IMG/VR virus record: IMGVR_UViG_3300031521_001337
Span: 62,001 to 126,000 of that record
Length of the DNA stretch: 64,000 bases
Strand: one strand, 5' to 3'
The position numbers and the translations under genes are program-made. Below are positions 605 to 21,041 of this stretch, in pieces. The notes beneath the pieces were generated by a model. The model saw nothing but the letters and a program-made list of their open reading frames with translations, made no database searches and had not been told where the DNA came from. Each line of letters opens with the position of its first letter. Positions within the stretch are counted from its first letter, which is position 1.

Positions 605-1030
605 ATGGAAGAAGAAGTTGTATATGACGCAGTTGAAACGTTTGATACGTTTCCTGCTGTCATAGTTCAAGATGATGGAATTGCTTTATCTGAAAGTGAA
701 GATGTTGTTGAAGAACAAGTAGAAGAAGTTATTGCTATTATCCCCCGTAAAATTACAATTACAAGAGACTATATTCATTTACCTGAGGAAGGAGACGGAC
801 AAGGTGATGGAGAAGGTGAAGGTACAGGTAAAGGTGGAGTTGGCGATATGTCAGAATTCTTGAGGAAAATTCAAGAAGCGCGTGAACAATTAGAAGGTCT
901 GAATGGGGGAGATCCTTATGACGACAGTAGTGAAGGTGATGCATCAGATAACACTGCTGCAGAAGCTCAACACACGTTAGCGTCTACTGATGGTGAACGT
1001 TTTAATGTGCGTAAAAAAGAACGTTTTTAA
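605..1030 (+). CDS. acidic, low-complexity hypothetical protein
   Basis: 141 aa, D/E-rich with GEGDGQGDGEGEG linker. Confidence 0.7.
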   Translation: MEEEVVYDAVETFDTFPAVIVQDDGIALSESEDVVEEQVEEVIAIIPRKITITRDYIHLPEEGDGQGDGEGEGTGKGGVGDMSEFLRKIQEAREQLEGLNGGDPYDDSSEGDASDNTAAEAQHTLASTDGERFNVRKKERF

Positions 1031-6159: not shown

Positions 6160-6566
<407 letters not shown>

Positions 6567-15257: not shown

Positions 15258-15473
15258 ATGGATTGGATTTTAATGATTTTAAACTTATACGCTTATTATT
15301 TGATAAGTAATAAGAGAATAATTGGCTTCATACTTGGAGCAATTGGAAGTATTCTTGGAATAATATTATTCTGGAATATGATTTCAATAGTTATAATGTA
15401 TTTAGCATTTACAGTTTTAAATATTAGAGGATTTTTAAAATGGAATAAAAAATTAAAAGAAGAAACAGTCTAG
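15258..15473 (+). CDS. small three-TM protein, possibly PnuC-like half-transporter
   Basis: W..L...Y.L...K..IGF..G...........Y......N..GF.KW pattern. Confidence 0.45.
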   Translation: MDWILMILNLYAYYLISNKRIIGFILGAIGSILGIILFWNMISIVIMYLAFTVLNIRGFLKWNKKLKEETV

Positions 15474-15474
15474 G

Positions 15475-15608
15475 TCCAGAGGGCTCTAATTGTATATGAG
15501 GGAAGTGACTCTGGAATTCCTCCGTATTTAAAGTATTGGTGAATGTTATATCTAGAATGGTAATTTATTATCGTCGATGATGTTTCTATAATATACAATC
15601 GCAATTAG
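15475..15608 (+). ncRNA. candidate pseudoknotted RNA
   Basis: TCCAGAG/CTCTGGA stem; loop ATTGTATAT is perfectly complementary to ATATACAAT at 15591. Confidence 0.45.
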
Positions 15609-15629
15609 TATATCTTTTTTAAAATATAA

Positions 15630-15792
15630 AATATTGAAATGTTGGCTTGGAAGCAGCAATCATCTAAAGAGTGGGACGAGACTACGTTGATAAACCAATT
15701 CAAGTTGGAATTTAATGTGGTAAGGTAAGTTGGAGGTCACCCCGTAACTGGTAAGGACTGAAATCCCTTTGGCGTAATAGCACATCAATATT
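15630..15792 (+). ncRNA. 23S rRNA H43-H44 (uL11-binding GTPase-associated centre) mimic with 99-nt insertion
   Basis: ATGTTGGCTTGGAAGCAGCAATCATCTAAAGAGT...GCGTAATAGCACA, closed by AATATTGA/TCAATATT. Confidence 0.75.
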
Positions 15793-15802
15793 TTTAAAAA
15801 TT

Positions 15803-15958
15803 AAATGAGTAACATCCGAGAATGGTCGGTGAGTCAGGTAAGAGGGGAACCCAATGCTGACTTAGAATGAGGAATTAAGTCCAGATATCCCTAACGAAAA
15901 GATGTAGGTGTAGTCCCGTGGATAACATGCGTGTAATTGTCCCTCCCGTTACTCATTT
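15803..15958 (+). ncRNA. candidate structured ncRNA (~156 nt)
   Basis: 11-bp closing stem AAATGAGTAAC/GTTACTCATTT; internal CCGA/TCGG and TGAGTCAG/CTGACTTA stems. Confidence 0.6.
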
Positions 15959-15965
15959 TTAAAAT

Positions 15966-16038
15966 GCTCCAGTAGCTCAGTGGATAGAGCATCGGTTTTC
16001 TAAACCGAGGGTCGCTGGTTCAAGTCCAGCTTGGAGTA
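15966..16038 (+). tRNA. tRNA-Arg(TCT)
   Basis: TCGGT-TTTCTAA-ACCGA. Confidence 0.95.
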
Positions 16039-16039
16039 C

Positions 16040-16525
16040 AACTAGGTTTATTTATTATTAGCTACGATAGAATAAACCATCAAAGATGGGGTTGTAGTCT
16101 TAACTTATAAAGTTATTGCCCATACCAATTAACAAAACTAACTAGGGTCGAGCTACATTTTGCCACTGTTAGTATTAGACTTAGAGATCAGAGGTAGCCG
16201 TGACTACTCTAAGTTGAACAAATAAAATCTCTTTAATTGAAGCAAAACGGTAACCAGGGGGAGACACCCAACCCAATAAGGGGTAAGGACGAAAGTTGAG
16301 TACGTAGGTTATAAACCATAGCAGTGGTTGAATGTTTTGGTAAATGTAGTTATGATATGGTTAGTGTTCGCAGAAAAGCCTTCGTTATGACCTAAGTCAA
16401 TATAATTATTCCACTCTGCTTAAAGTGAATAAAGAGATTTTTTATGCCTACTTATACCCTCAAGCTTATATCTTGTTGAAAGGTTATTTGGTGACAGCCT
16501 GGTTCAATCCCAGGAGTAGGTACAA
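16040..16525 (+). ncRNA. candidate large ornate ncRNA (~480 nt)
   Basis: Several long-range helices of 9-12 bp, some crossing; ends in a T-arm-like hairpin CCTGG-TTCAATC-CCAGG. Confidence 0.55.
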
Positions 16526-16526
16526 T

Positions 16527-17006
16527 ATGGAAAGAAGTAAAAATGAATTATTAGCAATTGAAAAAGGATATAAAATAACTATAAATGGTGATATTTTAAA
16601 TCCTAAAGAAAAAATTTTAACAGGAACTATTTATAATAAAAATTATAAAAAATTTAATATTAGATTAAATGAAAAACATATTCCAGTTAAAGTACATAGA
16701 TTACAAGCATATCAAAAATTTGGAGAAATTATTTTTAACGAAGATATAGTAGTTAGACATTTAGATGGTAACGGATTAAATAATTCTTGGGATAATATTG
16801 AAATTGGATCATATAGTGATAATATGATGGATAAACCTAAAGAAGAAAGAATTAGAATTGCATCTAATGCTAATAAAAAATATTCTGATGAATTAGTTTT
16901 AGAAATTAAAGCATACCGAAATTTAGGGCATACTTATAAAGAAATTATGGAAAAATATAATATTAGTAGTAAAGGAACCATTAGTAATATTATTAATAAT
17001 AGATAA
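16527..17006 (+). CDS. HNH homing endonuclease with C-terminal HTH
   Basis: KVHRL.AY...VVRHLDGNGLNN..DNIEIGSYSDN; ATG at 16527 preferred over GTG 16425, which overlaps structured RNA. Confidence 0.85.
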   Translation: MERSKNELLAIEKGYKITINGDILNPKEKILTGTIYNKNYKKFNIRLNEKHIPVKVHRLQAYQKFGEIIFNEDIVVRHLDGNGLNNSWDNIEIGSYSDNMMDKPKEERIRIASNANKKYSDELVLEIKAYRNLGHTYKEIMEKYNISSKGTISNIINNR

Positions 17007-17079
17007 GCCCGTATGGTGAAGTGGTTAACATTCGATTCTGCAAAAATCGCACGCCCAAGTTCGAATCTTGGTATGGGCT
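17007..17079 (+). tRNA. tRNA-Cys(GCA)
   Basis: CGATT-CTGCAAA-AATCG; U73. Confidence 0.92.
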
Positions 17080-17095
17080 CAAAATAAATAAAATT

Positions 17096-17311
17096 ATGAA
17101 ATCAGGAGATATAGTTAAAATGACTAAATCCTTTAAAAGAGGATTAATTGCAAATGATTGTAAAGATCATGTTGATGAATTTGGAAAGTGTATAGGTATA
17201 GTTGAAGATTTAGTATATCCTGATGGTGAAGGTGATGAATGGAATGTTAGATGGTTACCTTCTAAATTAAGATATGGTTATTCTCCAGAAGAACTTGAAA
17301 TAATTAAATAA
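17096..17311 (+). CDS. hypothetical protein (SH3/KOW-like)
   Basis: MKSGDIVKM...; start moved out of tRNA-Cys. Confidence 0.6.
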   Translation: MKSGDIVKMTKSFKRGLIANDCKDHVDEFGKCIGIVEDLVYPDGEGDEWNVRWLPSKLRYGYSPEELEIIK

Positions 17312-17476
17312 AACCAGTAGGAACAACTGAACGTAGATTGAGAAGGCCTAGGAACTTAATAACGAAAGTTTGATAGTTTATGCATACTTGTCTCGCGCAT
17401 CGTATTTGGCGCATGGGTATTATTAAGTTTTTACCAGTTTGGCATACAATCACCGTGGCACAAAAAACTTTAAATC

Positions 17477-17550
17477 GGGGTCTTAGCTCATTTGGCTAGA
17501 GCGATTGCTTTGCAAGCAATAGGTGGTGGGTTCGAAACCCACAGATTCCA
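17477..17550 (+). tRNA. tRNA-Ala(TGC)
   Basis: G3:U70; ATTGC-TTTGCAA-GCAAT. Confidence 0.95.
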
Positions 17551-17899: not shown

Positions 17900-18469
17900 A
17901 TGATTTTAAAACAAGGAATGAAGGTTTTATTAAAACCTAAAGAATGGTATGATGAGAAAAAAGCAGATTTCTTGCCAATATTGACTAATGATATGGAACA
18001 ATATTTTGGTAAAGAACATATTATAAAATCTGTAAAAATTGGAGGATCTCAATTAAGAGGTGTTGAATTATTTAATATTGAAAGTGATTCTAAAGGTTGG
18101 TATTTCTCAATAGATATGGTTGATAAGTATTATGATATGCCAATTACAACTAATGGATATGATAGATTAGTAAGTATGTATAATACCATAGGATCTAGTT
18201 TAACTTCAGGTACTTCAAGTATGTCAAGTGCTTTAAGTATGTATGAACAACTTTCATTACAAGAATTGAGAGGTAGAATGAGAGGTACTACTGATTTTAG
18301 TGGATTATTAGGTTTTTCAAACAGTCTTTCAATTCACGTTAAAGCATTTATACAATATGTTGAGAAGTTTGTTCCATTTGCTTATGATGGAGTTGTAACT
18401 TATACAGATAATGAAAATAATTCATTTACTTTAACACAGTTATATGAGAGATTCACTACCAACAGTTAA
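17900..18469 (+). CDS. paralog array 2, member 1
   Basis: KQGMKVLLKPKEWY...DMEQYFGK...; C-terminal F..Y.EK...NNSFTL..LYE. Confidence 0.8.
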   Translation: MILKQGMKVLLKPKEWYDEKKADFLPILTNDMEQYFGKEHIIKSVKIGGSQLRGVELFNIESDSKGWYFSIDMVDKYYDMPITTNGYDRLVSMYNTIGSSLTSGTSSMSSALSMYEQLSLQELRGRMRGTTDFSGLLGFSNSLSIHVKAFIQYVEKFVPFAYDGVVTYTDNENNSFTLTQLYERFTTNS

Positions 18470-18902
18470 GTATAAAGTAGGACAATGTGTACATTTGAAA
18501 TCTAAAGATTGGTTTGATGTACATGACGATAGAGGTGATGTTAGATTAGGTTTAGCTAGTGATATGAGACCTTATTTTGGAACAATTCAAGTTATTACTC
18601 ATGTTGATACAAATTATTGTGGATATGTTTTAGCAGGTTGCAGTGGTGGTAGTGATAATGAATATACGTATACTGATCAAATGATTGATAATATAAAAAC
18701 TTCTGAATTAATACATAGACATGAAAATATAATTGATCCTGATCAATATTCATGGGATGTTATTACTCCAAATAAATTTCCTGAACATCTTGAAAAGAAT
18801 TATACTCCATTTCTTGATGGTGAAACTTTAACATTTACTGATAAAGATAATAATTCATTTACTTTAAAAGAAATATTTGATGAGTTCTTTAAAGAAGTAT
18901 AA
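18444..18902 (+). CDS. paralog array 2, member 2
   Basis: KYKVGQCVHLKSKDWF...DMRPYFG...EKNYTP...NNSFTLKEIF. Confidence 0.8.
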   Translation: MRDSLPTVKYKVGQCVHLKSKDWFDVHDDRGDVRLGLASDMRPYFGTIQVITHVDTNYCGYVLAGCSGGSDNEYTYTDQMIDNIKTSELIHRHENIIDPDQYSWDVITPNKFPEHLEKNYTPFLDGETLTFTDKDNNSFTLKEIFDEFFKEV

Positions 18903-19254
18903 AATTGGTGATGTTGTTAGACTAAAATCATTAGCTTGGTTTGATGAAATGATGGAAAATCATGTAGCTGTTGAAGGTGGATTAATTTATGATATGCGTC
19001 AGTTTTTTGGTAAAGAACAAGTAATTTCAAATAATGAAGCAGGTTATGCATATATACCTTTATATCACTTAGTAGATGATCCACGTCATTGGAATTTTAG
19101 TAATGATATGATTGAAGGAATAGCTTCATCTTTTCCTGAATATGTAGAAAAGAATTATACACCACTTATTGATGAAGGTGGATTGTATTTTATAAATGAT
19201 AATAATGATGCATATAGTTTAAAAGAAATATATGAGAGGTACAGAGCGATATAA
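18877..19254 (+). CDS. paralog array 2, member 3
   Basis: KYKIGDVVRLKSLAWF...DMRQFFGK...EKNYTP...NDAYSLKEIY. Confidence 0.8.
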   Translation: MMSSLKKYKIGDVVRLKSLAWFDEMMENHVAVEGGLIYDMRQFFGKEQVISNNEAGYAYIPLYHLVDDPRHWNFSNDMIEGIASSFPEYVEKNYTPLIDEGGLYFINDNNDAYSLKEIYERYRAI

Positions 19255-19768
19255 AGTAGGTGATAAAGTATTAATGCAGTCTTTAGAATGGTTTGAAGAT
19301 GCATTAAATGGACGAGGTCCAAGACCTCTTTTTGGAGTTGTTGAAAGCATGCGTAGATTGTTTGGAAAAGTTCAAACAATTACTATGAGTAGTCAATCTA
19401 TGAATGATGAGGATAAATATAAAATATCAGGAGCTAATGAATTTAATATCAGTAATGATATGATTAGAGGTTTACTTGAAGAATTTAGTCAAACAATAAC
19501 TCATGATGGTAGATCAGAATATGTTCATAATGATGTTCTTGCTAGTATGACACCATCGTCAGGAACTTATATCATTAATTATGGAGATGATCCAAGATTT
19601 GGGGGCACAGTAACAAGAACTAAATCATTTTTACAAGTATTAAAGGAGAATTACACTCCGACAATAATTGATGAAGAATTATTATTTGTTAATAAAGATA
19701 ATGAATCCTATACATTAGATGTTTTATATAATAAATTTCATAATACACCTTCAGGATTATTTGAATAA
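19232..19768 (+). CDS. paralog array 2, member 4
   Basis: RYKVGDKVLMQSLEWF...SMRRLFGK...KENYTP...NESYTLDVLY. Confidence 0.8.
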   Translation: MRGTERYKVGDKVLMQSLEWFEDALNGRGPRPLFGVVESMRRLFGKVQTITMSSQSMNDEDKYKISGANEFNISNDMIRGLLEEFSQTITHDGRSEYVHNDVLASMTPSSGTYIINYGDDPRFGGTVTRTKSFLQVLKENYTPTIIDEELLFVNKDNESYTLDVLYNKFHNTPSGLFE

Positions 19769-20861: not shown

Positions 20862-20950
20862 GGGGGTGTGGCGAAATTGGTAGCCGCAGCTAAATATAGG
20901 TTAGACCATAGCGGTCGTGAGACATGGGGGTTCGAAGCCCTCCGCCCCCA
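20862..20950 (+). ncRNA. tRNA-Leu-like RNA with a distorted, 7-nt-expanded anticodon arm
   Basis: Leu-type acceptor, D, variable and T arms; anticodon region GCTA-AATATAGGTTAGACCA-TAGC. Confidence 0.7.
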
Positions 20951-20956
20951 CTAAAT

Positions 20957-21035
20957 TCCCCAATGGCGTAATTGGCAGACGCGTATTCTTCGGAATATGT
21001 CGAGAGACATGTGGGTTCGAGTCCTCCTTGGGGGA
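20957..21035 (+). ncRNA. class II tRNA-like RNA with a UUCG tetraloop in place of the anticodon loop
   Basis: TATTC-TTCG-GAATA; D-arm GCG..CGC; variable arm GTC-GAGA-GAC; acceptor TCCCCAA/TTGGGGG. Confidence 0.7.
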
Positions 21036-21041
21036 GCAAAT

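What the first reader, a model, noticed from the sequence alone, without database searches (positions are those of the whole stretch)
16040..17006. ~480-nt ornate RNA directly upstream of an HNH gene
Seen helices: GCTACATTT(16152)/AAATGTAGT(16342), CCACTGTTA(16163)/TAGCAGTGG(16319), GACTTAGAG(16178)/CTCTAAGTT, AAAATCTCTTTA(16224)/TAAAGAGATTTT(16430), TAGGTTATA(16305)/TATGACCTA(16386), TGCCTACT/AGTAGGTA, and a T-arm-like end hairpin. Several cross, implying pseudoknots. It could be a GOLLD/ROOL-class giant phage RNA (these occur near tRNAs) or, since the HNH ATG follows within a few nt, an RNA partner of the nuclease (HEARO-like arrangement, although this HNH is not IscB-like).
Basis: partly seen in the sequence, partly recalled or inferred. 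Interest (0 to 1): 0.7.

Follow-up and report, generated by a model that had tools for sequence, protein, structure and literature searches.

The report
Uncatalogued phage RNA, unrelated to HNH
About 220 of the flagged 480 bases encode a conserved, folded RNA of unknown function that recurs in a few large uncultured phages, but it is not a GOLLD, ROOL or HEARO RNA and is not tied to the HNH nuclease gene beside it.

Summary
As a 480-nt unit, though, the region folds no better than shuffled sequence, and only one helix, the 12-bp AAAATCTCTTTA/TAAAGAGATTTT pair, has comparative support.

That helix closes a ~220-nt RNA at 16223-16443. Six other distinct members turned up in viral and metagenome contigs. 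In the closing helix, 7 of 12 pairs carry compensatory changes. A 31-nt core, TAAACCATAGCAGTGGTTGAATGTTTTGGTA, is invariant, and a U-run follows the helix.

No member matches any Rfam 15 family, including GOLLD, ROOL, HEARO and group I/II introns. No other member lies next to an HNH gene, and HNH homologues elsewhere lack the RNA. So the HNH is a free-standing homing endonuclease that happens to sit here.

The rest of the flagged stretch is two separate things: a lineage-specific hairpin spacer (16040-16222), and a degenerate tRNA-like element (16446-16522) whose stems cover the HNH ribosome-binding site.

Function is unknown. I favour a stand-alone stable RNA in the phage's tRNA/ncRNA array.

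In passing: 400 nt upstream (15628-15794) lies an RNA that copies the 23S rRNA GTPase-associated centre. That family also occurs in cultured jumbo phages such as GAP32 and XacN1.

The parts
15966..16039 (+). tRNA-Arg(TCT). It marks the left border of the flagged non-coding stretch.
   Evidence: ARAGORN; Rfam tRNA at 69.1 bits.
16040..16222 (+). Spacer, 'module A'. It is specific to this phage lineage and is not part of the conserved RNA.
   Evidence: MFE fold has z -1.65. No homologue in any fetched locus. It is kept at ~99% in a close relative seen in run X21, which carries a 79-nt insertion at 16129/16134. Other family members have a coding gene or other elements here.
16223..16443 (+). The conserved structured RNA, 221 nt.
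- P1: 16224-16235 pairs with 16430-16441.
- P1b: 16236-16238 pairs with 16343-16345.
- P2: 16243-16249 pairs with 16333-16339.
- Variable insert 1: 16250-16311.
- P3: invariant hairpin AACCAU-AGCA-GUGGUU, 16314-16329.
- Variable insert 2: about 16346-16409.
- P5: hairpin 16411-16428.
- U-run: 16438-16443.
   Evidence: Alignment A3 of six members with RNAalifold gives 36 pairs, 12 of them with compensatory changes. In P1, 71 of 72 cells pair, against at most 64 when partners are swapped. G.U cells number 14 against 1 A.C. CM R1 scores this copy at 111 bits, and it is the only copy in the 213-kb genome.
16312..16342 (+). Invariant 31-nt core, TAAACCATAGCAGTGGTTGAATGTTTTGGTA. It comprises the P3 hairpin, the GAAU junction and the 3' strand of P2.
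   Evidence: Identical in all six full-length members; the partial seventh (L026) has one A-to-G change that leaves a G.U pair. Present with 0-4 mismatches in many short contigs with differing flanks in wastewater and aquatic runs.
16446..16522 (+). Degenerate tRNA-like element.
- 7-bp acceptor-type stem: 16446-16452 with 16515-16521.
- T-arm: CCTGG-TTCAATC-CCAGG, 16498-16514.
- A 4-bp hairpin with the 7-nt loop CTTATAT.
- No D-arm.
The AGGAG Shine-Dalgarno of the HNH gene (16512-16516) lies inside its T and acceptor stems.
   Evidence: Read from the sequence. MFE fold. ARAGORN does not call it at default or at ps80, and Rfam tRNA does not call it at E<=10. Short contigs of about 95% identity occur in run X19.
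16527..17006 (+). Free-standing HNH homing-endonuclease gene, 159 aa, HNH_3 with a weak C-terminal HTH match (below Pfam's cut-off).
   Evidence: Pfam PF13392 at E 4.6e-8; HTH_28 at 0.0068, 16.9 bits against a cut-off of 25. PHROG 59 'HNH endonuclease' at 2.6e-19. Relatives lie in other contexts.
17007..17080 (+). tRNA-Cys(GCA). It marks the right border of the HNH insertion.
   Evidence: ARAGORN; Rfam tRNA at 53 bits.

Best explanation
Window 16223-16443 (+) encodes one member of a rare, previously uncatalogued family of phage structured non-coding RNAs, 207-278 nt long.

Shown:
- The RNA is a multi-branch fold. A covarying 12-bp helix formed by its two ends (P1) closes it, and a U-run follows directly.
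- P1 stacks on a short P1b and on P2. P2 encloses a variable hairpin region and the invariant P3 hairpin.
- A second variable arm and a small P5 hairpin complete the junction.
- The RNA is an autonomous module, with one copy per genome. It sits at gene boundaries or inside tRNA/ncRNA arrays of large phages.
- It is independent of the HNH gene.

Inferred:
- P1 plus the U-run acts as the RNA's own intrinsic terminator, or as its 3'-end protection. The product would then be a discrete, stable RNA.
- The invariant 31-nt core is the surface recognised by a conserved partner. The core may be fixed in space by a 4-5-bp kissing contact between the P3 loop (AGCAG) and the P5 loop (CUGC).
- The RNA lies in a tRNA array, next to an RNA that copies the 23S GTPase-associated centre. 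I therefore think the partner most likely belongs to the host translation or tRNA machinery, so the RNA would act in trans as a ligand or decoy. This last step is a guess, at about 25%.

The HNH gene is a free-standing homing endonuclease that inserted between a degenerate tRNA-like element and tRNA-Cys. Its ribosome-binding site is buried in that tRNA-like fold, which would keep its translation low.

The confidence given (0.75) is for the identity claims: a real, autonomous, HNH-independent structured RNA family at 16223-16443. It does not cover the proposed function.
For: Family membership. Exact-motif scans returned six further distinct members:
- L022, L023 and L024 from IMG/VR.
- L025, L026 and L028 from metagenomes.

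Fold and covariation.
- They align over the whole length with the same block order.
- RNAalifold predicts P1, P1b, P2, P3 and P5. Of the 36 pairs, 12 show double compensatory changes, 7 of them in P1.
- In P1, 71 of 72 cells pair. When 3' strands are swapped among members, the mean is 59.4 and the maximum 64. Sliding the partner column drops pairing to 36-51.
- There are 14 G.U cells against 1 A.C cell, which marks the + strand as the RNA strand.
- A close relative in run X21 keeps the spacer at ~100% identity. After 16226 it switches to ...TTCAGATTGAAGCAA..., that is, a different P1 followed by the conserved ATTGAAGCAA block.

Copy number and distribution.
- The genome holds a single copy: CM R1 scores 111 bits, and the next hit 14.8 bits.
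- No member hits any Rfam family at E<=1.
- A 20-nt stretch of the core was absent from 185,579 species genomes, apart from one chance coding match in Pedobacter. GenBank phages gave only chance partial matches (E 0.6) to a 40-nt query spanning the core.

Independence from HNH.
- Neighbours of the other members are unrelated hypothetical proteins. None is an HNH.
- HNH homologues L004, L005 and L006 have no RNA upstream.

Context.
- The RNA starts 2-9 nt after a stop codon in four loci. In three loci (window, L023, L025) it lies within 300 nt of a tRNA or tRNA-like element.
Against: - Only seven distinct members are known. The invariant core carries no covariation, so P3, most of P2 and the proposed kissing contact rest on conservation and complementarity alone.
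- Thermodynamic stability is unremarkable: z is -1.21 for 16223-16443.
- There is no direct evidence of transcription, of the ends, or of stability. The runs labelled RNA that hold relatives are probably DNA-contaminated or DNA.
- The window's copy departs from the family in P5: a C.A mismatch and an 8-nt loop CUGCUUAA instead of CUGCAUA. It could be a weakened copy.
- The proposed partner and the trans action are inference from context only.
- The core shows no significant similarity or complementarity to E. coli rRNAs.
Confidence: 0.75

Rival explanations
1. A cis-acting 'ornate terminator' or 3'-UTR element. P1 plus the U-run would simply terminate, or insulate, transcription of the upstream gene or tRNA. 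The conserved core would bind a factor that modulates termination or processing, and the RNA would have no trans function.
For: - In four of six loci the RNA begins 2-9 nt after the stop codon of an upstream ORF.
- Every member with a readable 3' end finishes in a run of 5-6 U directly after P1.
- Neighbouring modules in the window and in L025 have the same design: an A-run, a closing helix and a U-run.
Against: - A terminator needs no 31-nt invariant core and no ~200-nt multi-branch interior.
- The upstream genes are unrelated to one another.
- In the window and in L025 the element follows other RNAs, not a coding gene.
- L028 has an ordinary terminator hairpin right after it.
Confidence: 0.2
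2. One ~480-nt pseudoknotted RNA spanning 16040-16526. The upstream spacer would pair with the core through helices 16152/16342 and 16163/16319, perhaps as a switch that masks the core.
For: The spacer-core duplex energy of -29.4 kcal/mol is reached by only 0.8% of shuffles and 0.6% of other genome windows. The spacer strands are 100% kept in the X21 relative.
Against: - The spacer is absent from all other family members.
- The pairing would disrupt the invariant P3 hairpin.
- The whole region has an MFE z-score of +0.17.
- Helices of 9 bp with G.U are expected by chance, about 14 per shuffle.
- No covariation can be tested.
Confidence: 0.08
3. An RNA partner or regulatory leader of the HNH nuclease, in a HEARO/omega-RNA-like or riboswitch-like arrangement.
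For: In this phage the RNA lies 83 nt upstream of the HNH start. The HNH Shine-Dalgarno is sequestered in the intervening tRNA-like fold.
Against: - None of the five members whose flanks could be read has an HNH neighbour.
- HNH homologues at 58%, 51% and 44% identity lack the RNA.
- A U-run terminator separates the RNA from the gene.
- The protein has 159 aa and no RuvC or bridge-helix parts.
- There is no HEARO hit.
Confidence: 0.03
4. A DNA-level element. The 12-17-bp inverted repeats would be the terminal inverted repeats of a miniature transposable element, not an RNA helix.
For: - Terminal inverted repeats bound a ~200-bp unit: 17 nt at 88% identity (I5).
- The unit sits at varied gene boundaries.
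- The X21 relative diverges at about the left repeat.
Against: - Each genome has a single copy.
- The arms differ between members yet stay complementary, and internal helices (P1b, P5) also covary.
- The strand asymmetry of 14 G.U against 1 A.C is an RNA signature.
- No target-site duplication is evident.
Confidence: 0.04
5. A diverged member of a known large RNA class that the models miss: GOLLD, ROOL, a group I/II intron, or a fragment of captured rRNA.
For: - The location in a phage tRNA array resembles that of GOLLD and ROOL.
- A true rRNA look-alike lies 400 nt upstream.
- A loose alignment placed three non-coding blocks in colinear order on 23S rRNA.
Against: - Rfam 15 gives no hit at E<=10 for the window or at E<=1 for six members in other contigs.
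- The LSU model finds nothing in the genome.
- The 23S alignment scores of 16040-16526 and 17312-17476 are below the shuffle means, z about -0.6.
- The core does not resemble E. coli 16S, 23S or 5S rRNA.
- At ~220 nt it is far smaller than what I recall for GOLLD and ROOL (about 800 and 580 nt; my own knowledge, not checked here).
Confidence: 0.03

Closest known systems
GOLLD and ROOL (large ornate RNAs of bacteria and phages, often near tRNA genes)
   Same: It is phage-borne and non-coding, and it lies within or next to tRNA arrays. It has a multi-branch fold with highly conserved unpaired or loop nucleotides. Its function is unknown.
   Different: There is no match to either Rfam model. At about 220 nt it is a fraction of their size. 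Its consensus is different, and it is known only from uncultured phage contigs.
Phage T4 stable RNAs C and D (species 1 and 2), encoded in the T4 tRNA gene cluster (my own knowledge, not tested here)
   Same: Both are small stable RNAs of unknown function embedded among phage tRNA genes, presumably co-transcribed and processed with them.
   Different: The T4 RNAs are reported to be shorter and tRNA-like at their ends. This RNA ends in a P1 helix plus a U-run, not a CCA-type end.
Bacterial and phage Y RNAs (YrlA)
   Same: A long helix formed by the 5' and 3' ends closes a structured module. Both occur in phages next to tRNAs. Both may act as a protein-tethering RNA.
   Different: This family gives no YrlA hit. 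It has no T-arm or D-arm mimic in the module, and no Ro/Rsr gene was seen nearby.
HEARO / IscB omega-RNA (RNA partner of an HNH-containing nuclease)
   Same: In this one phage a structured RNA lies just upstream of an HNH gene.
   Different: The co-occurrence is not conserved. The HNH protein is a 159-aa homing-endonuclease type. There is no HEARO model hit, and no guide-like 5' or 3' extension.
The 23S GTPase-associated-centre look-alike RNA found 400 nt upstream (15628-15794) and in jumbo phages
   Same: Same design: an A/U-rich closing helix that covaries, an invariant core, large variable inserts and a U-rich tail. Same habitat: tRNA arrays of large phages. Neither is in Rfam.
   Different: That family's core is 34-37 nt identical to 23S rRNA 1052/1055-1088. 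The present RNA's core resembles no rRNA segment tested. The two families co-occur only in this phage.

Membership tests
GOLLD / ROOL / HEARO (Rfam covariance models) | Score at or above the family's gathering threshold, or at least a marginal E-value, against the curated model. | tested here: not met
   cmscan of the whole window at gathering thresholds found only tRNAs and a tmRNA. For 15400-17500 at E<=10 the only hits were tRNAs and five chance matches. Six members in other contigs at E<=1 gave no hit on the RNA.
HEARO-like nuclease-RNA pair | Conserved adjacency of the RNA to the HNH-containing nuclease gene across relatives. | tested here: not met
   None of the five members whose flanks could be read has an HNH neighbour. 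Three HNH homologues have no RNA upstream.
Group I / group II intron | A match to the intron core models, an interrupted host gene with exon continuity, and the endonuclease ORF inside the intron. | tested here: not met
   No Rfam intron hit. No split gene flanks the region. The HNH ORF lies outside the RNA, after a U-run and a tRNA-like element.
Ribosomal RNA fragment or mimic (for the flagged region) | Significant similarity to 16S, 23S or 5S rRNA. | tested here: not met
   The LSU model has no hit in the genome. The alignment z-score of 16040-16526 is -0.57. Core, 5' block and P5 against E. coli rRNAs give z <= 2.5. Only 15639-15670, outside the finding, matches 23S.
tRNA (for 16446-16522) | A cloverleaf with D-arm, anticodon arm and T-arm, recognised by ARAGORN or the Rfam tRNA model. 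| tested here: not met
   Not called by ARAGORN at default or at ps80, nor by Rfam tRNA at E<=10. The acceptor stem, the T-arm and a 7-nt loop CTTATAT are present, but there is no D-arm.
Structured non-coding RNA family (general criterion) | Several diverged homologues whose predicted helices are kept through compensatory changes, with a strand-specific G.U signature. | tested here: met
   There are seven members. Twelve pairs have compensatory changes. P1 pairs in 71 of 72 cells, against at most 64 with swapped partners. G.U cells number 14 against 1 A.C.
Intrinsic (Rho-independent) terminator | A stable helix directly followed by a U-run, and termination shown at that point. | tested here: inconclusive
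   P1 (12 bp) is followed by 5-6 U in every member with a readable 3' end. But the helix closes a ~195-nt interior rather than a small loop. The consensus scan does not call it, and no transcript ends are available.
Miniature inverted-repeat transposable element | Multiple copies, conserved terminal inverted repeats and target-site duplications. | tested here: not met
   The genome has a single copy. The arms differ between members but stay complementary, and G.U pairs are tolerated.

The most novel reading that the evidence does not exclude
The 1-kb non-coding island at 15474-16526 could be a battery of phage RNAs aimed at the host translation apparatus. One module is a near-exact copy of the 23S GTPase-associated centre, the L11/thiostrepton/factor-binding site. 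The RNA studied here would be a second module of the same kind. Its invariant 31-nt core would capture a universally conserved translation, tRNA-processing or defence factor, acting as a decoy or scaffold during infection.
Probability: 0.15. Interest if true: 0.85.

Novelty: new variant of a known kind. Interest (0 to 1): 0.55.

Why it matters
Large phages carry tRNA arrays whose extra non-coding content is mostly unannotated. This result shows that the array in this 213-kb peat phage holds at least two conserved structured RNAs that are absent from Rfam.

- The flagged RNA is a clean, small family of ~220 nt. Strong covariation and an invariant core make it a tractable target for structure probing and partner pull-downs.
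- Its neighbour, a 23S GTPase-associated-centre look-alike, is also present in cultured jumbo phages (GAP32, XacN1, Serratia BF, Erwinia pEa_SNUABM, Pseudomonas pf16). It could be tested directly at the bench.
- If these RNAs act on the ribosome or on tRNA metabolism, they would add RNA mimicry to the known ways phages take over translation: tRNAs, tmRNA and ribosomal proteins.
- The negative results matter too. The apparent RNA-HNH pairing is an accident of a homing endonuclease landing in the array, not a new RNA-guided nuclease.

Tried and rejected
1. Fragmented 23S rRNA. A loose alignment put 15630-15965, 16040-16526 and 17312-17476 in colinear order on E. coli 23S. Shuffle controls gave z -0.57 and -0.60 for the last two, and the LSU model found nothing. 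Only the 32-nt match at 15639-15670 is real.
2. The 31-nt core as a CRISPR repeat. It recurs with differing flanks in short contigs. But a 364-nt contig holds it only once, and the homologous loci show a full RNA around it.
3. The core as an rRNA mimic or antisense. Nothing was significant against E. coli 16S, 23S or 5S.
4. Syntenic anchors. The flanking 71-aa ORFs gave only identical copies plus one relative (L018) that lacks the RNA.
5. Further scans. A variable tetraloop pattern and the P5 motif added no new members. The genome-contig scan gave one chance coding hit in Pedobacter.
A 5'-domain model was used instead.
7. ARAGORN at very low thresholds gave only implausible calls for the tRNA-like element.
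8. The tRNAs downstream of the RNA in L023 and L025 are homologous to each other (long, class-II-like) but not to the window's tRNA-like element. So there is no conserved RNA-tRNA pairing.
9. Literature. Four searches found no description of either RNA family. The 2023 catalogue of ~10,000 viral candidate structured RNAs (PMC10690425) could not be checked, because its supplements are not held.
10. Expression evidence. Runs labelled RNA hold relatives, but they are flagged as probably DNA, or in one case as not shown transcribed. No transcription claim is made.
Full report
**Setting.** The window is bases 62001-126000 of a 213,486-bp IMG/VR phage genome rated complete. The genome was assembled repeatedly from peat metagenomes. 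It is AT-rich, 30.5% GC in the window. Between 14584 and 26810 it carries 24 tRNA genes (one of undetermined anticodon), with a tmRNA at 6160-6566. The largest ORF-free stretch in the window is 15474-16526. It contains tRNA-Arg(TCT) at 15966-16039. The finding covers its right half plus the HNH gene at 16527-17006. That gene is followed at once by tRNA-Cys at 17007-17080.

**Checking the observation.** The non-coding stretch has 38-39% GC, against 20-24% in the HNH gene. Taken as one 491-nt RNA, however, it is no more stable than shuffled sequence. The z-score is +0.17 on the + strand and -0.18 on the - strand. It holds 21 helices of at least 9 bp (G.U allowed), against 14.4 +/- 3.6 in shuffles. 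Only the 12-bp perfect helix AAAATCTCTTTA (16224) / TAAAGAGATTTT (16430) is unusual, appearing in 2% of shuffles. Sequence alone therefore does not establish an ornate 480-nt RNA.

**Known families.** Rfam 15 gives nothing but tRNAs and the tmRNA at gathering thresholds. For 15400-17500 at E<=10 it gives only tRNAs and chance matches. There is no GOLLD, ROOL, HEARO, group I/II intron, T-box or YrlA hit.

**Is the RNA tied to the HNH?** The ORF from ATG 16527 is a 159-aa HNH_3 protein with a weak C-terminal HTH match that falls below Pfam's cut-off, and it matches PHROG HNH endonucleases. Apart from 100%-identical copies of this same phage, its relatives in IMG/VR are L004 (58%), L005 (51%) and L006 (44%).
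- None of these has similarity to 16040-16526 upstream.
- In L004 the gene follows a tRNA-Met by 70 nt inside another tRNA array.
- In L006 it follows a coding gene directly.
- Searching those whole contigs found only tRNA-level matches.

So the HNH moves independently, as free-standing homing endonucleases in phage tRNA regions do.

**Finding the real unit.** Public runs were laid on the region.
- A close relative in run X21 keeps 16036-16226 almost unchanged, with a 79-nt insertion at 16129/16134. It diverges after 16226.
- A ~35-nt piece at 16309-16348 recurs with 0-4 mismatches in many short contigs with differing flanks, from wastewater and aquatic samples.
- This piece occurs once in the genome.
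- An exact-motif scan of IMG/VR returned three new contigs, L022, L023 and L024. A metagenome scan returned L025, L026 and L028, plus identical copies.

All of these show the same block order over 207-278 nt:
1. The 5' strand of a terminal helix.
2. ATTGAAGCAAAAC.
3. A variable insert.
4. The invariant TAAACCATAGCAGTGGTTGAATGTTTTGGTA.
5. A second variable insert.
6. The hairpin TCCACT-CTGCATA-AGTGGA.
7. The 3' strand of the terminal helix.
8. TTTTT(T).

**Covariation.** In alignment A3 (six full-length members), RNAalifold predicts P1 (12 bp), P1b (3 bp), P2 (7 bp), P3 (6 bp) and P5 (6 bp).
- The P1 sequence changes from CTCTTTA/TAAAGAG to TATCCTTA/TAAGGATA (L022), CACTCACA/TGTGAGTG (L023) and CTCTCTA/TAGAGAG (L025).
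- Seven of its 12 pairs carry double compensatory changes.
- 71 of 72 cells pair. When the 3' strands are swapped among members the mean is 59.4 and the maximum 64. Sliding the partner by one or two columns gives 36-51.
- P1b and P5 also carry compensatory changes.
- P2 varies only through G.U-compatible changes.
- P3 is invariant.
- Across all helices there are 14 G.U cells and one A.C cell. This identifies the + strand as the folded RNA and argues against a purely DNA-level inverted repeat.
- The X21 relative supplies a further P1 variant...AAAATTCAG, followed by ATTGAAGCAA.
- L026 has an A-to-G change in P3 that still pairs, as G.U.

**Distribution.**
- A covariance model of the 5' domain (R1) scores the seven members at 97-119 bits. 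It finds no second copy in the 213-kb genome, where the next hit scores 14.8 bits.
- No member hits Rfam at E<=1.
- GenBank phages gave only chance partial matches (E 0.6) to a 40-nt query spanning the core.
- A 20-nt stretch of the core is absent from 185,579 representative prokaryote genomes, except for a chance match inside a Pedobacter coding region that lacks the rest of the motif.

The family is thus rare, and so far confined to uncultured phage or metagenome contigs.

**Context of the other members.**
- The RNA starts 2-9 nt after the stop codon of an upstream ORF in L022, L023, L024 and L028.
- In L025 it follows a tRNA-like minihelix. In the window it follows a hairpin spacer.
- The flanking proteins are unrelated hypothetical proteins. 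One is a DPBB lytic-transglycosylase-like protein, and none is an HNH.
- tRNAs lie 200-300 nt downstream in L023 and L025.
- L022 has a Hatchet ribozyme 2.7 kb upstream.

The common theme is an autonomous RNA module placed at gene boundaries in ncRNA-rich regions of large phages.

**The rest of the flagged stretch.**
- 16040-16222 folds into four local hairpins (z -1.65). It has no homologue outside this lineage.
Only 0.6-0.8% of controls reach that duplex energy. But the pairing would break the invariant P3 and cannot be tested by covariation. I keep it as a minor rival: a lineage-specific masking helix.
- 16446-16522 has a 7-bp acceptor-type stem, a canonical-looking T-arm and a 7-nt loop CTTATAT on a 4-bp stem, but no D-arm.
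- Neither ARAGORN nor Rfam accepts it as a tRNA.
- Its T and acceptor stems contain the AGGAG that precedes the HNH ATG by 10 nt. The fold would therefore occlude the HNH ribosome-binding site (inference).

**Mechanism.**
- Shown: a conserved multi-branch RNA fold on the + strand, closed by its own ends, with a U-run; one copy per genome; independence from HNH.
- Inferred: P1 plus the U-run terminates or protects the transcript, so that a discrete stable RNA results.
- Inferred: the invariant P3 / GAAU / P2 surface is a recognition site.
- Inferred: the P3 loop plus closing G (AGCAG) can pair with the P5 loop (CUGC, or CUGCU in the window) as a kissing contact.
- Guess, at about 25%: the partner belongs to the translation or tRNA machinery. 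This rests on the tRNA-array habitat and on the neighbouring rRNA look-alike.

**Side finding.** 15628-15794 is a module closed by a 10-bp helix, AAAATATTGA/TCAATATTTT.
- It contains TGTTGGCTTGGAAGCAGCAATCATCTAAAGA, which matches E. coli 23S 1057-1088 (helix 43 of the GTPase-associated centre) at 29 of 32 positions.
- A ~100-nt insert follows, then TTTGGCGTAATAGCAC, which is helix-44-like.
- A degenerate scan found the same arrangement in 14 other viral contigs. In these, 34-37 nt are identical to E. coli 23S 1052/1055-1088, the inserts are 70-280 nt, and the closing helices covary. There is no other 23S similarity.
- It is also present, unannotated, in cultured jumbo phages: Cronobacter GAP32, Xanthomonas XacN1, Serratia BF, Erwinia pEa_SNUABM phages, Pseudomonas pf16 and Aeromonas 4_4572.
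- Rfam has no match for it, and four literature searches found no description.
- Several copies sit between tRNA genes.

This is outside the finding's coordinates, but it is the more striking object in the island.

**Verdict.** What is really there is a new, small, well-supported phage ncRNA family of unknown function. It sits next to an unrelated homing-endonuclease gene, in an island that also holds an rRNA-mimicking RNA.

Noticed in passing
window 15628-15794 (also L032-L045; L053 about 1497-1745; L054 about 1493-1736): An RNA module closed by a covarying helix carries a near-exact copy of 23S rRNA helix 43 of the GTPase-associated centre. In the window it matches 29 of 32 positions. In 14 other viral contigs, 34-37 nt are identical to E. 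coli 23S. A large variable insert and a helix-44-like TTTGGCGTAAYAGCAC follow. It is also present, unannotated, in cultured jumbo phages (GAP32, XacN1, Serratia BF, Erwinia pEa_SNUABM, Pseudomonas pf16, Aeromonas 4_4572), often between tRNA genes. It has no Rfam match, and none of four literature searches turned up a description. It may be a decoy for L11, the stalk or translation factors (speculation).
   Followed up: partly
window 15803-15958: A second ORF-free module is closed by an 11-bp perfect helix, AAATGAGTAAC/GTTACTCATTT. It is GC-rich inside and has no Rfam hit and no homologue in the fetched loci. A diverged copy (22 substitutions, 10 indels over 15641-16010) exists in run X19. A close relative in run X21 lacks 15534-15956 altogether. 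These modules therefore behave as cassettes.
   Followed up: partly
window 17312-17476: Another ORF-free block, 38-41% GC, lies between a 71-aa ORF and tRNA-Ala. It has no Rfam hit, and its resemblance to the 3' end of 23S rRNA is not above chance (z -0.6).
   Followed up: partly
window 6160-6566 and 20862-21037: The phage encodes a full-length tmRNA with tag GNKTISFARTAFMAAA. Two of the ARAGORN calls are odd: a 90-nt tRNA-Tyr(ATA), and an 82-nt tRNA with an undetermined two-base anticodon.
   Followed up: no
window 17900-19768: Four tandem paralogous ORFs of 189, 152, 125 and 178 aa share N-terminal (K.G..V.LKS..WFD-like) and C-terminal (NYTP...F.D..N.S/YTL.E.Y..F) motifs. The one scanned (17900-18466) has no Pfam match.
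   Followed up: no
window 15258-15473: A 71-aa ORF matches only the N-terminal third of PnuC-like nicotinamide mononucleotide transporters (Pfam 26.1 bits, just under the cut-off; PHROG 1880). It is probably a truncated remnant.
   Followed up: no
L022 11444-11608: A Hatchet self-cleaving ribozyme (Rfam 72.3 bits, above the gathering score) lies 2.7 kb upstream of that phage's copy of the RNA. The same locus has a tRNA with anticodon TCA, called tRNA-SeC by ARAGORN, which may be a UGA suppressor.
   Followed up: no
L023 2618-2713 (-) and L025 672-777 (-): Two homologous, unusually long (96 and 106 nt) class-II-like tRNAs with encoded CCA carry insertions in the anticodon region. They lie 200-300 nt downstream of the RNA in two related phages. 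ARAGORN misses them, and Rfam tRNA scores about 40 bits.
   Followed up: partly
L025 about 780-980 (-): Between the RNA and the tRNA lie two more modules of the type 'A-run, closing helix, U-run'. One contains GCTGTTGAATGTTGTATAG, which resembles part of the invariant core (GTGGTTGAATGTTTTGGTAG). It may be a degenerate paralogue.
   Followed up: no
window 15739-15758 and 16271-16290: The rRNA look-alike module and variable insert 1 of the studied RNA share a 20-nt direct repeat at 80% identity: ACCCCGTAACTGGTAAGGAC and ACCCAATAAGGGGTAAGGAC. The GGTAAGGAC part also occurs in the look-alike RNA of L044. Its meaning is unknown.
   Followed up: no
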